Assembly (NCBI GenBank): GCA_964019335.1 | Contig: OZ025730.1 | Coordinates: 186,001-250,000, forward strand | Origin: Diplonema japonicum | Taxonomy: Eukaryota > Protista > Euglenozoa: Diplonemea | Reading direction: 5' to 3' | Length of the DNA: 64,000 nt | In this document: positions 2,564 to 59,074 of the stretch, piece after piece | How the letters are laid out: each line of letters begins with the position of its first letter | Position numbering within the stretch: position 1 is the first letter of the stretch | Made by a program: the position numbers and the translations under genes | The notes under the pieces: generated by a model | The model's database searches: none | Told to the model about the DNA's origin: nothing | Seen by the model: the letters and a program-made list of their open reading frames with translations, nothing else

Positions 2564-3339
2564 TTTTTTTTTCTTTGTATCCCTCCCCTCGCTCACGTCC
2601 ACCTTTTTTTTTTTTTTTTTTTTGAATGAAAAAAAAAAATAATAATAATAATAATAATAAAAAACTGGTCGTTTTTTTTTTTTTGTATGGAAGAATAGAT
2701 GGAAGTATGGGTGGGGAAGGGAAGAGAGAATAAAAAAATTCACTATAATGGGAGGGGGGGGGGGAGAGAAGTGTCAGCAACGTCGCCCCCCCCCCCCCCC
2801 CCATCACCAAAGAAAAAAAAGAAGGAATAGGGAGGAAAAAAAAGAAGAAAAAAGAAAAAAAGAAAGAAGAGAAGAAAGAAAAAAAGGAATTTGTGGTTTT
2901 TATACTTTTTTACCCCCTTCTCTTTTTTGTTCTCTCCCCGCCTACGCTTTTTTTTTTCTTGCTGGGGCAAAGAAAAAAAGTTTAATCGGGAAGCTGAGAA
3001 GGGGGGGGGGGGGGGGGGGTGTGAAATAGAAAGGGGAACGAATAGAGTAAAATAGATGAAGGAAAGAGGATGGGATTTAAAAATCTTCTTTTTTTTTTTT
3101 AAACATCTCTGACATGCGGGCCTGCCTTTTTTATGATTTTTTTAAAGGTATGCCTTATCTATTCTTTCAAGGAGTCACCCTGGACGACTGTTACACAGGT
3201 GCCCGAGGGGTTGGGTCAAAAATTCCCGGCCATTTTGAAGTCTTCCTTGCTTTTTTTTTTCTTTTTTTTTTCTTTCCAAGCACCTTAGAAAATATGAGGC
3301 TGAAACAACGTATTTCAAAAAAGGATGGAAGGGATCTGT

Positions 3340-24420: not shown

Positions 24421-25296
24421 TTATTTTTTTTTCTTTGTTGCTGTTTTCTTCCCGACCGCCTTCTTCGCGCTCACCTTGACGGTCGATTTTTCCTTTGCTT
24501 TCCGTTTTTTCGCAGCGGTTTCTAAGACGGCTTTCACGGGTGCGAAGGACGTCCTGTGGTGTGGAGTCACACCGAGCTTCTTGATAAGCTCGCGATGTTT
24601 CGCAGTGGGGTACCCCTTGTGCCGAGCAAGCTCGAACTCAGGGTGTTCTTTGTGCAGGACGTGCATGATCCTGTCGCGGGTTACCTTAGCGATGATAGAC
24701 GCTGCCGCAATGCACATTTCTTTGCTGTCGCCTTTTACAATGGAGTCGGCAGGGGTGGGGTGGTTGGAGGGGATCTTGTTCCCGTCTATGAGGGAGTGGT
24801 ACTGTACAGTGGCCTCTACCTGCTGGGGGGGCATGGTGTAGCATGTTGATGTGGAGGGGCAGTCTTTGCATTTTTTTTTCCGCCTCGTTTTGTTGTTCGC
24901 AACGAACGCCTTACACACATCACGCATGCCATCTAGCGTCGCTTGCAAAATGTTCCTCCGGTCGATGTGGTTCGGGCTTATGACGGCGACGGCCCACTTC
25001 ACCTCTTTGTTGGCTGTTAATCTCGCATAAACTTCTTCTCTTTTGGTCTCAGATGTCAGCATCTTGCTGTCGATTACGTCTTTATCTTTGAATATATTAG
25101 GCAGTACGCATCCCGCAACAACTACAGGCCCTGCCAGTGGGCCTCTCCCTGCCTCGTCCACACCTATCACCTTTATCTTTCCTTTGCGGTTCGCTTCTTC
25201 CGCGCTCCTTCCTATTCCCGTGGGCGGTTTTGGTTGTTTTTTCTTTTTCGGGGATGCCGGTGGTTTGTTGCTCGTTCTTTTTTTCGATACCACCAT
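24421..25296 (-). CDS. rnhB: Ribonuclease HII, bacterial RnhB-like
   Basis: IGVDEAGRGPLAGPVV, DSK, LIDGN, IVKGDSK...IAAASIIAKVTRD, HKGYPT...HRTSF. Lys-rich N- and C-terminal tails. ATG at 25296. Confidence 0.92.
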   Translation of the reverse strand: MVVSKKRTSNKPPASPKKKKQPKPPTGIGRSAEEANRKGKIKVIGVDEAGRGPLAGPVVVAGCVLPNIFKDKDVIDSKMLTSETKREEVYARLTANKEVKWAVAVISPNHIDRRNILQATLDGMRDVCKAFVANNKTRRKKKCKDCPSTSTCYTMPPQQVEATVQYHSLIDGNKIPSNHPTPADSIVKGDSKEMCIAAASIIAKVTRDRIMHVLHKEHPEFELARHKGYPTAKHRELIKKLGVTPHHRTSFAPVKAVLETAAKKRKAKEKSTVKVSAKKAVGKKTATKKKK

Positions 25297-25493
25297 TCCC
25301 CCCCCCCCCCCCCCCCTCCTTTTTCGAATCGATGTTTTTGCTGGAAACAATTAGTATATATATGAATGCACTAAAAGAGAACAAGAAGCAGGGAGGGGTG
25401 TGTTCCTGGAAGTGATGAGCCGCCCAATTAAAAAAAAAAAAAAAAAAAAAATGGGGCTTTGATTGCAACACTAGGTGGCGTTAAGCGTGCAAT

Positions 25494-25759
25494 GAAGCAC
25501 GAACTACCTACTTGATTACAGGGGGCGCTCCTCGGCCGAGCAGTAGCTTCTTCTGCGTTCCTTAATGTGTGCTCAACCCTAGCCGGGGCGTCCCGGGTAA
25601 CCAAGATTCTGCGCTCGTGCAGTTTGCTGCCTGTTCGTCACCCTGAGCATCTGCGTTACGTTCTTCCACTCGGGCGCTACCGGTGATGACCGACGAGGAG
25701 GTCAACAGCGAACAACACATCTGATGTACTTCTTATATTTCCATGTTATCCCCACCACC
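25494..25759 (-). mobile_element. Short dispersed repeat (~270 bp), copy 1, retroposon-like, headed by an HDV-like ribozyme
   Basis: Closely similar, same-orientation copy at 58797-59074; similarity begins at GGTGGTG on the minus strand. Confidence 0.75.
25617..25759 (-). ncRNA. HDV-like self-cleaving ribozyme (predicted), copy 1
   Basis: P1 GGUGGUG/CAUCACC; P3 ACC/GGU; L3 UCCUCGUC; P1.1 GG; P4 CGCCC-GAGU/GCUC-A-GGGUG; J4/2 CGAA (catalytic C at 25637); P2 GCUGUUG/CAGGCAGC with further extension. Confidence 0.8.
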
Positions 25760-26201
25760 AAAAAAAAGAAGAAGAAGAAAAGGGGAATGGCAGGATAAGG
25801 AGAGGACAGGGGGAGGAAAAAGGACCAATTTAATCGGCAACAATAACTAAAAAAAAATAGAATATCTACGAAGAAAAAGGAGGGAAAAAAAGGAGGGTTT
25901 GGTGACAGCAGAAGGACGAACAAAGGAGCACCTTCTTTTTTTCTTCTATCCTTAATTGCTTCTTTTGTTCTTCCTCCAAAAGGAAAAAAAAGAGAAAAAA
26001 GAAAAGGTCACGAGTTACGGACTATATGTGCTGCTGTATGGGGGGGGGGGGGGGGTGAACTAAAAAAAACAAATTGCCATCACGCACCAAATAGAACCCT
26101 ACCTGGTGATGAAAGGGAAAGAATAAAGAGGGGAGAAAAAAAAAAACACTTTCGTGGAACACTTTTTTATTTTATTTTTATTTATTTTTTTTTTTTTTTT
26201 T

Positions 26202-57776: not shown

Positions 57777-58796
57777 TGCATCATGGAAAAACAAAGAGGA
57801 AAAAATATTCATAAGTTTTTAAAAAAAGGGGGGGGTCAGGTTGAGCAAAAAAAAAAAGAAGAAGAAAACTTGGGAAGGACAAAAAAGAGGAGGAAAAAAA
57901 AAAAAGAAGAAGAAAGAAAAAAGAAAAAAAAAAAGAGTGTTTTTTTACGTTCCTTTGGTAGTCTGGGAAGTATAAGTAAGGAGGGGAGAAAAAAGTTTTT
58001 TTTTTCAAAAGCAGGAGATCAGTGGAAGAGAGATCTCACTCCTTTGGCAACACTTTTTTTTTTTTTTTTTTTTTTTTTGCCTGATCGCCCAGCGACTGTG
58101 CATTGTTCATTTTTATTTTGAATTTTTTTTTCCATTTTTTATCCCGATTTAAAGAAAATGGGGGGGGGGATGTAATGGGGAAAGGGAAGAAATTGGATTA
58201 AAAAGCACCTTAAGAGAGGGAGACAGGGAGGGACTGTAAAAAAAAAGGAGGGGAGGGGGGAGTTTTCCAATAAGGAAAGGGAGGATGAAACATAAAAAAT
58301 ATAATAAAAAAAAAATATAAGGAAACGGGGTTGTGTAAAGAAGAAAAAAAATGGAACGTTTATATTTCATTTTCTTTTTAGAAACAAGAAAAAGGAGCAA
58401 AAAAAAGAGGAAGAAAAAAAAAGGGGGGAAGAAGGTGTGGGGGGAAAAGATGGATTTTTTTTTTATATCTTCTAAGAAACGTTGGTGACTCAATCTTATT
58501 TTGGCATTTTGGCCAAATACCTGGAGGTATATCACTCCACAAACGTTAGCACTGCGAGGGTGGCTATTTTCTTTTCTATATGGTTTTTTTTTTTTTTTTT
58601 CTTTTTTTTTTTTCTTTTTTTTTCAAATCCCTCTTTACGCCCGGAGCCTTGGCTAAGCTTTTTTTTTTTTTCCTTTTTTTTTTCTTTCTTTTGTAATTTT
58701 TTTTTTTTTTTCATTGTTGTTTAGGTAGGGGGGAAACAAAAAACGTTCGTGCAAAAAAAAACTCGATGTAAAGGAAGCCGGTGGGGGCACCCTGCA

Positions 58797-59074
58797 CAAG
58801 CACCATTTACTTGATTACAGGGGGCGCACCTCGGCCTAGCTGTAGCTTCTTCTGCGTTCCGCGTCGTGTCCTTAATGCGTGCGGTGTGCAGCTCAACCCC
58901 AGCCGGGGCGCCCCGGGTAACCAAGATTCTGAGCCCGTGTAGTTTGCTGCCTGTTGGCCACCCAGAGCATCTGCTTCTTCCACTTGGGCGCTACCGGTGA
59001 TGACCGACGGGGAGGTCAACAGCGAACAACACATCTGATGTACTTCTTTATATTTCCATGTTATCCCCACCACC
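58797..59074 (-). mobile_element. Short dispersed repeat (~280 bp), copy 2, headed by an HDV-like ribozyme
   Basis: Homologous to 25494-25759 with small indels. Confidence 0.75.
58937..59074 (-). ncRNA. HDV-like self-cleaving ribozyme (predicted), copy 2
   Basis: Same P1, P2, P3 and P1.1 as copy 1; L3 UCCCCGUC; P4 CGCCCA/UGGGUG; J4/2 CCAA (catalytic C at 58957). Confidence 0.8.

What the first reader, a model, noticed from the sequence alone, without database searches (positions are those of the whole stretch)
25617..25759. HDV-like ribozyme at the exact 5' end of an apparently unrecognised short retroposon-like repeat
Seen (minus strand): the repeat starts GGUGGUG, which pairs 7/7 (one GU) with CAUCACC at 25688-25682. 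Every element of the nested double pseudoknot follows in the right order: P2 5' GCUGUUG, P3 ACC, L3 UCCUCGUC, P3' GGU, P1', GG for P1.1, a P4 hairpin, J4/2 CGAA, then P2' CAGGCAGCAAACUGCAC. Established: the HDV antigenomic core reads ACC-UCCUCGC-GGU, and HDV-like ribozymes define the 5' ends of R2, RTE and trypanosomatid L1Tc/ingi/SIDER retroposons. The sequence does not resemble the Pr77 hallmark as I recall it. Inference: a distinct ribozyme-headed element family whose 5' boundary is set by self-cleavage.
Basis: partly seen in the sequence, partly recalled or inferred. Interest (0 to 1): 0.9.

Follow-up and report, generated by a model that had tools for sequence, protein, structure and literature searches.

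The report
Self-cleaving-ribozyme fold heading a short retroposon
A roughly 330-base mobile repeat, present about a thousand times in this marine flagellate genome, begins exactly with a sequence that folds like the hepatitis-delta-type self-cutting RNA; this is a known way for such elements to trim their own 5' end, here in a lineage where it seems undescribed and not yet shown to cut.

Summary
On the minus strand, G1 = 25759. A strict descriptor hits only copies of this repeat (0.027 expected per shuffled window).

The repeat is a non-coding retroposon of 326 nt plus a poly(T) tail, with about 700-1,460 copies and two or more subfamilies. It inserts into sense-strand poly(T) tracts of a diplonemid-like genome, not a trypanosomatid one. 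APE/RT LINEs in the same genome also end in T-runs.

The constant sequence starts at G1. The A-rich bases in front of G1 also appear in front of 5S rRNA retrocopies. Five 5S-repeat chimeras join at G1. So the RNA template starts at G1.

About 5% of copies instead carry the spliced leader, joined one base downstream (AG|G2). That is a second route to a 5' end.

Points against:
- Rfam gives no hit.
- The first P1 pair is G-C, not the G·U wobble.
- There is no statistical covariation.
- No autonomous element with this 5' end was found.

Verdict: probably a real ribozyme-headed SINE, a new member of a known kind (NARTc, SIDER, R2 SIDEs). Other readers of this scan noted the same family elsewhere in this genome.

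The parts
25753..25759 (-). P1 5' strand, GGUGGUG (positions 1-7). The proposed cleavage is between 25760 and 25759.
   Evidence: first constant base of the family
25710..25752 (-). J1/2 insert (positions 8-50). It can form a 10-bp peripheral hairpin, 9-18/41-50 (P1.2-like). Alternatively 42-50 can extend P2.
   Evidence: peripheral P1.2 domains are known in large HDV-like ribozymes (PMC4908430)
25703..25709 (-). P2 5' strand, GCUGUUG (51-57)
25689..25702 (-). P3 ACC, L3 UCCUCGUC, P3' GGU (58-71). C62 and C63 are the P1.1 partners. U61 and G66 stand at the positions of the L3 U·G reverse wobble.
25680..25688 (-). P1 3' strand CAUCACC (72-78), followed by GG of P1.1 (79-80)
25639..25676 (-). 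P4 hairpin (84-121): 10-bp stem, A116 bulged, 17-nt loop
   Evidence: the subfamily changes fall in the loop or keep pairs
25634..25638 (-). J4/2, ACGAA. C123 at 25637 is the candidate catalytic cytosine.
25617..25633 (-). P2 3' strand (127-134) and its possible extension (135-143)
25452..25616 (-). Non-coding body of the repeat. This copy lacks 18 nt of the 326-nt consensus.
25430..25451 (-). 22-nt T-run tail. Its length varies from 4 to about 30 nt among copies.
25760..25781 (-). Upstream pyrimidine tract (target poly(T) tract). In most copies, together with the junction A and G1, it forms a polypyrimidine tract followed by an AG splice acceptor.
58753..59074 (-). Second copy, subfamily B, with G1 = 59074. 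It has the same ribozyme region and a different 3' module. Private changes are U64C in L3 and G124C in J4/2.

Best explanation
The stretch is the 5' head of a non-autonomous, poly(T)-tailed retroposon (SINE-like). The consensus is 326 nt from G1 to ...CCCCA, followed by a T-run. The host is a diplonemid-like euglenozoan.

Copies lie in the sense orientation inside the poly(T) tracts between genes of polycistronic units, so they are transcribed as part of long host transcripts.

The first 134 nt fold into an HDV-like double pseudoknot that cuts the RNA immediately 5' of G1 (between window 25760 and 25759). This would give the retroposition template a defined 5'-OH end free of host sequence.

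APE/RT LINEs of the same genome also end in T-runs. They are inferred to supply the machinery: an A-run of the nicked target primes on the U-tail, and one to a few mostly A-rich extra bases are added at the 5' junction.

A minority of templates are instead trans-spliced at the AG formed by the junction A and G1. These give spliced-leader-headed copies.

Shown: the fold, the boundary at G1, T-tails on the SINE and a LINE, the chimeras, and the spliced-leader-headed copies.
Inferred: cleavage activity, co-transcription, and which LINE mobilises the element.
For: - Fold and its rarity by chance.
- L3 UCCUCG and J4/2 CGAA match the HDV core as I recall it (from memory, not tested).
- The U and G of L3 that form the reverse wobble are present; their conservation in HDV-like ribozymes is stated in PMC3774820.
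- Family size: 1,459 first-look candidates at 87-97% identity, 678 exact 5' ends, and 365 copies with exact L3/P3'/P1'/P1.1 and J4/2/P2' motifs.
- Boundary: G1 is constant and the upstream sequence is unrelated between copies.
- 5S rRNA retrocopies carry the same kind of extra bases (CA, AAAT, A-runs) before their known 5' G.
- Five independent 5S-repeat chimeras join at G1.
- Variable, non-templated 5' junctions are what R2 shows when its ribozyme cuts at the element's own end (PMC3774820).
- T-tails: SINE; a LINE with a 2,064-aa APE+RT ORF.
- Subfamily B differs in the ribozyme region only in loops or in pair-keeping ways: 89:116 goes G·A to G·U to A-U, U45·G140 becomes U-A, and A122G.
- The ribozyme region is about 3-fold less divergent than the body.
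- Large J1/2 domains are known in active HDV-like ribozymes (PMC4908430).
Against: - No cleavage or RNA-end data.
- Rfam finds no HDV-family match even at E <= 10 on 101 nt.
- G1 pairs with C78 rather than U. A review calls the G·U wobble essential in HDV (PMC8495972), although L1TcRz cleaves before a C1 (PMC3185411).
- There is no statistical covariation, because the copies are too alike.
- The nested MFE is no better than shuffles.
- The lower divergence of the 5' region may reflect CpG-rich hot spots in the body rather than selection.
- No LINE with this 5' end was found.
Confidence: 0.7

Rival explanations
1. The 5' end at G1 is a transcription start, from an internal promoter or Pol III-type transcription that ends in the T-run. 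The HDV-like fold would then be coincidental, vestigial or inactive.
For: - The element ends in a T-run and has no internal run of three or more T (consensus), so Pol III could transcribe it.
- G1-C78 replaces the G·U wobble.
- There is no Rfam hit.
- In L1Tc the same 77 nt are both promoter and ribozyme (PMC3383444), so a promoter role need not exclude the ribozyme.
Against: - A full descriptor match with G1 exactly on the family boundary is expected about 2e-7 per position.
- LINEs with long ORFs also carry T-tails, so the tail is a retroposition feature and not a Pol III terminator.
- Rfam found no match to any family, tRNA, 7SL and 5S included, in the stretch that holds the element.
- A/B boxes were looked for only by eye and none was seen.
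Confidence: 0.15
2. The boundary is set by spliced-leader trans-splicing at the poly(T)+AG acceptor, and the ribozyme-like fold is irrelevant.
For: - AG precedes G2 in about 70 of 100 listed copies, behind a T-run.
- Spliced-leader-headed copies of this repeat exist (L032, L033, L034, L048).
- Other retroelements here start with the spliced leader (L065).
Against: - Only about 5 of 100 listed copies carry the spliced leader.
- A spliced RNA starts at G2 behind 39 nt of leader, so leader-less copies starting at G1 are not its products.
- The T-run and the A are not copied from RNA: 5S retrocopies show the same junction pattern.
- The 5S-repeat chimeras join at G1 without any leader sequence.
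Confidence: 0.08
3. The match to the HDV-like architecture is a chance resemblance in a repeat whose ends are set by something unrelated.
For: - About 26 chance matches are expected genome-wide, extrapolated.
- There is no covariation statistic.
Against: - The match lies exactly at the family's first base.
- It also shares unscored features: L3 UCCUCG, CGAA, a stable P4, and a P1.2-like hairpin.
- The subfamily differences avoid the core.
Confidence: 0.07

Closest known systems
NARTc/L1Tc (L1TcRz) and SIDER elements of trypanosomatids
   Same: Short non-autonomous retroposons of a euglenozoan with polycistronic transcription. An HDV-like ribozyme occupies the first bases and cuts at position +1 of the element (PMC3185411, PMC4035085).
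   Different: - No similarity to the Pr77 segments that could be compared.
- The ribozyme is 134 nt with a 43-nt J1/2, against 77 nt.
- It starts with G, not C.
- P1.1 has two pairs, against one.
- The tail is poly(T), not poly(A).
- The host is diplonemid-like.
R2 ribozyme and R2 SIDEs (Drosophila and other animals)
   Same: - A 5' HDV-like ribozyme releases the element from a co-transcript.
- Cutting at the element's own end goes with variable 5' junctions carrying non-templated bases.
- Non-autonomous derivatives keep the ribozyme (PMC3774820, PMC3414825).
   Different: R2 is site-specific for 28S rDNA. Here insertions are dispersed in poly(T) tracts, and no autonomous element with the same head was found.
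Large HDV-like ribozymes with a J1/2 peripheral domain (drz-Agam-2 type)
   Same: A long J1/2 able to form a helix (P1.2) between P1 and P2 (PMC4908430).
   Different: Sequence unrelated. Here 42-50 could alternatively extend P2.
LINE-mediated chimeric retrocopies (for example U6-L1 or 5S-containing chimeras in mammals; recalled from memory)
   Same: A small Pol III RNA is joined head-to-tail to the 5' end of another retroposed RNA, as expected from template switching at the end of the template.
   Different: Here the acceptor RNA is 5S rRNA. The donor always ends at G1 of the repeat, with 0-2 extra bases or the 5S U-tail between them.

Membership tests
HDV-like self-cleaving ribozymes | Nested double pseudoknot in the order P1, P2, P3, L3, P3', P1', P1.1, P4, J4/2, P2' | tested here: met
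   94% of cells paired across 33 copies, against 27-51% when the partners are slid (the structure was derived from this sequence)
HDV-like self-cleaving ribozymes | P1 of at least 6 bp starting at the cleavage site, with G at +1 | tested here: met
   7/7 pairs and G1; the 6-bp minimum and invariant G1 are stated in PMC8495972
HDV-like self-cleaving ribozymes | G1·U wobble closing P1 at the cleavage site (typical of HDV and CPEB3, but not universal) | tested here: not met
   G1-C78 is a Watson-Crick pair. The wobble is called essential for HDV. L1TcRz, an accepted active member, yields a product starting at C1. I therefore treat the wobble as typical rather than defining.
HDV-like self-cleaving ribozymes | P1.1: two bases after P1' pair with L3 | tested here: met
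   G79, G80 with C63, C62
HDV-like self-cleaving ribozymes | L3 U and G that form the reverse wobble, and a cytosine in J4/2 followed by purines | tested here: met
   U61, G66 and C123-G-A-A are present in the sequence. Their roles are inferred from HDV.
HDV-like self-cleaving ribozymes | Mg2+-dependent self-scission giving a 5'-OH and a 2',3'-cyclic phosphate | not testable with these tools
HDV-like self-cleaving ribozymes | Match to an Rfam HDV-family covariance model | tested here: not met
   No hit at gathering score or at E <= 10. These models carry no pseudoknots, and the long J1/2 insert is likely to cost score.
Non-autonomous non-LTR retroposon (SINE/SIDE-like) | Short, dispersed, high copy number, with unrelated flanks | tested here: met
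Non-autonomous non-LTR retroposon (SINE/SIDE-like) | Simple-repeat 3' tail of variable length, shared in kind with resident LINEs | tested here: met
   T-run of 4 to about 30 nt. LINE L065/L016 ends in (TA)nT(n). The tail is T rather than A.
Non-autonomous non-LTR retroposon (SINE/SIDE-like) | 3' end shared with a LINE partner | tested here: inconclusive
   Variants in L077 and L078 share 17-21 nt with the L065-type LINE tail, and subfamily B shares 9-10 nt. The tail of subfamily A (the window copy at 25759) matches none of the LINE pieces held.
Non-autonomous non-LTR retroposon (SINE/SIDE-like) | Target-site duplications | tested here: inconclusive
   Both flanks are T-runs. Several copies share T(n) plus 1-3 bases on both sides by eye, but low complexity prevents a clean test.
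Pr77-headed L1Tc/ingi clade | Sequence similarity to the 77-nt Pr77 hallmark | tested here: not met
   Only the primer-derived parts of Pr77 (about 44 of 77 nt) could be compared, by eye. No similarity was seen beyond 7 nt.

The most novel reading that the evidence does not exclude
This genome runs an undescribed style of retroposition. LINEs and SINEs carry U/T tails and integrate into the sense-strand poly(T) tracts that serve as trans-splicing signals. One family uses two competing 5'-end makers one base apart: HDV-like self-cleavage before G1, and spliced-leader addition after G1. Each new insertion rebuilds a poly(T)+AG acceptor in front of the ribozyme. Four of the five 5S-repeat chimeras lack a terminator between the 5S part and the repeat. 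They could serve as Pol III-driven source genes whose promoter-bearing 5S part is cut off by the ribozyme.
Probability: 0.3. Interest if true: 0.75.

Novelty: new member of a known kind. Interest (0 to 1): 0.6.

Why it matters
If the RNA cuts itself, it extends ribozyme-headed retroposons to diplonemids, an abundant but little-studied group of marine protists. It would also add a natural HDV-like ribozyme with a G-C pair at the cleavage site and a large J1/2 domain.

With several hundred apparently intact copies sitting between genes of polycistronic units, such ribozymes could also cut host precursor RNAs at many intergenic sites.

The setting is an unusual and testable system for how retroelements obtain defined ends without their own promoter: T-tails, insertion into poly(T) tracts, spliced-leader-headed copies and 5S chimeras.

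Tried and rejected
- Rfam at gathering score on the whole window, and at E <= 10 on 701 nt and on 101 nt: no HDV-family hit.
- Metagenome scan with the core pattern: 18 unrelated GC-rich contigs and no relatives.
- Covariation on 33 copies: none, because the copies are too similar. The G101/C105 to A101/U105 change lies in the P4 loop and is explained by CpG transitions.
- Nested MFE versus shuffles: not informative.
- Plus-strand orientation with a poly(A) tail: considered. Rejected because spliced-leader-headed copies fix the RNA sense and LINE ORFs run into T-tails.
- Search for an autonomous element with this head: fetched LINE 5' regions show ORF1 but no ribozyme; OTU-bearing elements gave nothing; none of the 100 listed 5' ends lies upstream of a listed RT hit.
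- A second family with a partial HDV-like core (L069-L072) lacks a P1 partner and was not counted as support.

Full report
**What is there.** Read on the minus strand, the sequence from 25759 downward begins GGUGGUG. Number that G as 1, so position n = 25760-n. The HDV-like elements then follow in the canonical order:
- P1: 1-7 with 72-78 (CAUCACC, 25688-25682), 7/7 pairs with one G·U.
- J1/2: a 43-nt insert.
- P2: 51-57 with 127-134, 7 bp with one bulged G. It can be extended by 42-50/135-143.
- P3: ACC/GGU.
- L3: UCCUCGUC.
- P1.1: G79, G80 opposite C63, C62.
- P4: a 10-bp hairpin, 84-93/111-121, with A116 bulged.
- J4/2: ACGAA, with C123 at 25637.

These were checked.

**Is it more than chance?** I wrote a descriptor with only canonical requirements:
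- G1 and a 7/7 P1.
- A 3-bp P3.
- L3 with CC at positions 2-3.
- GG directly after P1'.
- CNAA followed by a 6-bp P2.

In about 260 kb of this genome it hit copies of this repeat and nothing else. In 150 dinucleotide shuffles of the window it occurred 0.027 times per window, both strands. That is roughly 2e-7 per position. A match whose G1 falls on the first base of a repeat family is therefore very unlikely to be accidental. The descriptor was written after seeing the example, so the figure is approximate.

Against this, three results are weak or negative:
- The nested minimum-free-energy fold is not better than shuffles. This is expected for a pseudoknot.
- Rfam finds no HDV-family match at any threshold tried.
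- The J1/2 region can form a 10-bp hairpin, 9-18/41-50. Active large HDV-like ribozymes with such a P1.2 domain are described in PMC4908430.

**The element.**
- The stretch heads a dispersed repeat with 1,459 first-look candidates. The scored ones are 87-97% identical.
- There are 678 exact matches to the 5' end.
- 365 copies have exact L3/P3'/P1'/P1.1 and J4/2/P2' motifs.
- The consensus runs 326 nt from G1 to ...CCCCA, followed by a T-run of 4 to about 30 nt.
- The window copy equals the consensus over 1-150.
- The second window copy (G1 = 59074) belongs to subfamily B. This has the same first ~265 nt but another 3' module.

**The host and the orientation.** All long ORFs of the window lie on the minus strand. 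The genome's spliced leader differs by two bases from the Diplonema leader listed in PMC3795323. One marine metatranscriptome holds part of the stretch. The host is therefore diplonemid-like, not a trypanosomatid.

- Some copies carry the spliced leader fused to G(G)UGGUGGGG (L032, L033, L034, L048).
- A LINE with a 2,064-aa endonuclease plus reverse-transcriptase ORF itself ends in (TA)nT(n) in the sense orientation.

Retroposons here are thus T-tailed and sit in T-tracts.

**Where does the RNA template start?** Upstream of G1 the copies are unrelated, usually a T-run. The base before G1 is A in about 70 of 100 listed copies. That could mean the element starts one or two bases earlier, or that a poly(T)+AG splice acceptor is part of it. 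Two controls argue otherwise.
1. Retrocopies of 5S rRNA, whose 5' end is known, show the same kind of extra bases between the T-run and their first G: CA, AAAT, A-runs, or a single A in a 5S-5S dimer.
2. Five independent 5S-repeat chimeras join the 3' end of 5S to G1. What lies between is A (three cases), CA (one case) or the 5S U-tail (one case).

This is the signature of template switching at the end of an RNA that starts at G1.

R2 elements whose ribozyme cuts at the element's own end likewise have variable 5' junctions with non-templated bases (PMC3774820).

About a fifth of the listed copies share the upstream sequence AC(C/T)TTTATCTTCTTTTTCAG. In the two arrays read, these copies lie in degenerate tandem arrays, and the repeat there has lost P1.1, P4 and J4/2. 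They are segmental duplicates, not retropositions.

**A second 5'-end route.** About 5 of 100 listed copies are headed by the full or partial spliced leader, joined at AG|G2. The junction A, G1 and the target T-run therefore act as a trans-splice acceptor one base from the proposed cleavage site. Spliced-leader-headed LINEs and relic double leaders (L046, L051) show that spliced RNAs are regular retroposition templates in this genome.

**Conservation.**
- Within 31 copies the ribozyme region is 1.7% divergent against 5.5% for the body. The body's CpG-rich stretches may explain part of this.
- Subfamily B differs in the ribozyme region by an extra A in the J1/2 loop, a 6-nt deletion in the P4 loop, A122G next to the catalytic C, 89:116 going G·A to G·U (L087) to A-U, and G140A turning U45·G into U-A.
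- Another abundant variant changes only the P4 loop.
- No change hits the core, but the formal covariation test is empty.

**Weak points.**
- G1 pairs with C78, not U. A review calls the wobble essential in HDV (PMC8495972). The active L1Tc ribozyme, however, leaves a product starting at C1 (PMC3185411).
- Cleavage is untested.
Two local scripts read the window file whole on the closed machine.
- No LINE with this head was found.
- A LINE-type tail is shared by some variants but not by subfamily A.
- No relatives turned up in metagenome contigs.

**Known or new?** Ribozyme-headed non-autonomous retroposons are established: NARTc and SIDER (PMC4035085) and R2 SIDEs (PMC3414825). The library holds no paper combining diplonemids and self-cleaving ribozymes.

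I file the element as a probable new member of that kind. Its unusual context is the T-tail, insertion into T-tracts, and an overlapping splice acceptor.

Other first-stage notes on this genome describe the same family and system. I used them as leads only.

Noticed in passing
genome-wide; L031-L052, L065: 217 dispersed copies of the 38-39-nt spliced leader head unrelated sequences. One is an APE+RT LINE with a 2,064-aa ORF (L065). Many lie near contig ends. L046 and L051 carry the leader followed by a second partial leader (TTTCTGTACTTTATTG), as expected if a leader-headed copy was re-spliced at the leader's internal AG.
   Followed up: partly
G000 C7:253645, C66:292572, C73:124747, C84:118205, C86:158126, C85:29185: 5S rRNA has been retroposed into T-runs several times, with extra A-rich bases at the 5' junction. 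One 5S-5S head-to-tail dimer is joined by a single A.
   Followed up: partly
G000 C23:616860, C24:138919, C73:124622, C86:158253, C91:25504 (L020, L085, L087): Five 5S rRNA-repeat fusions. Four have no T-run terminator between the 5S part and the ribozyme, so Pol III could read through and the ribozyme could cut off the 5S part. The three read in full have internal deletions in the 5S part.
   Followed up: partly
L069-L072 (C5:508147, C18:490249, C64:106053, C106:219737): Another dispersed family starts (A)GGGGGTTACTGGG behind a T-run. About 57 nt in, it has a partial HDV-like core: P2 GCUCGUC/GACGAGC, P3, L3 UCCUCGGA, GG, a UUCG mini-P4, and CGAAGA. No P1 partner exists at its own 5' end. In L071 a fragment resembling the 5' end of this repeat lies just upstream and would pair.
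   Followed up: partly
L077 (C1:651900-653400), L078 (C8:839100-840500): Degenerate tandem arrays mix a GGACTGGACC-type satellite with copies of the repeat that lack P1.1-P4-J4/2. By eye these copies seem rich in C>T and G>A changes, which would fit methylation-driven decay.
   Followed up: no
contig ends, e.g. C24:159-36478, C8:846991-856460, L073-L075, L107-L109: Subtelomeric elements with ORFs of 2,000-3,000 aa that contain an OTU domain (112 OTU hits). Spliced-leader-headed sequences starting GTCGTTCGTG... lie near the same contig ends. In C24 they repeat every 10,659 bp.
   Followed up: no
flanks in L005, L018, L026, L044: A further repeat ending ...GGGGGGCTTGTCCTGTACTTTGAG plus a T-run. 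New insertions often sit in its tail.
   Followed up: no
window 25350-25430: The repeat's T-tail lies about 80 nt upstream of the 309-aa ORF at 24421-25350 (minus strand). It may serve as that gene's polypyrimidine tract for trans-splicing.
   Followed up: no
L059 around 2940-3130: A spliced-leader-headed short insert (GTGTCCGACCGTGCC...) followed about 170 nt later by an A-run, inside a LINE copy. Some leader-headed retrocopies may therefore be A-tailed.
   Followed up: no
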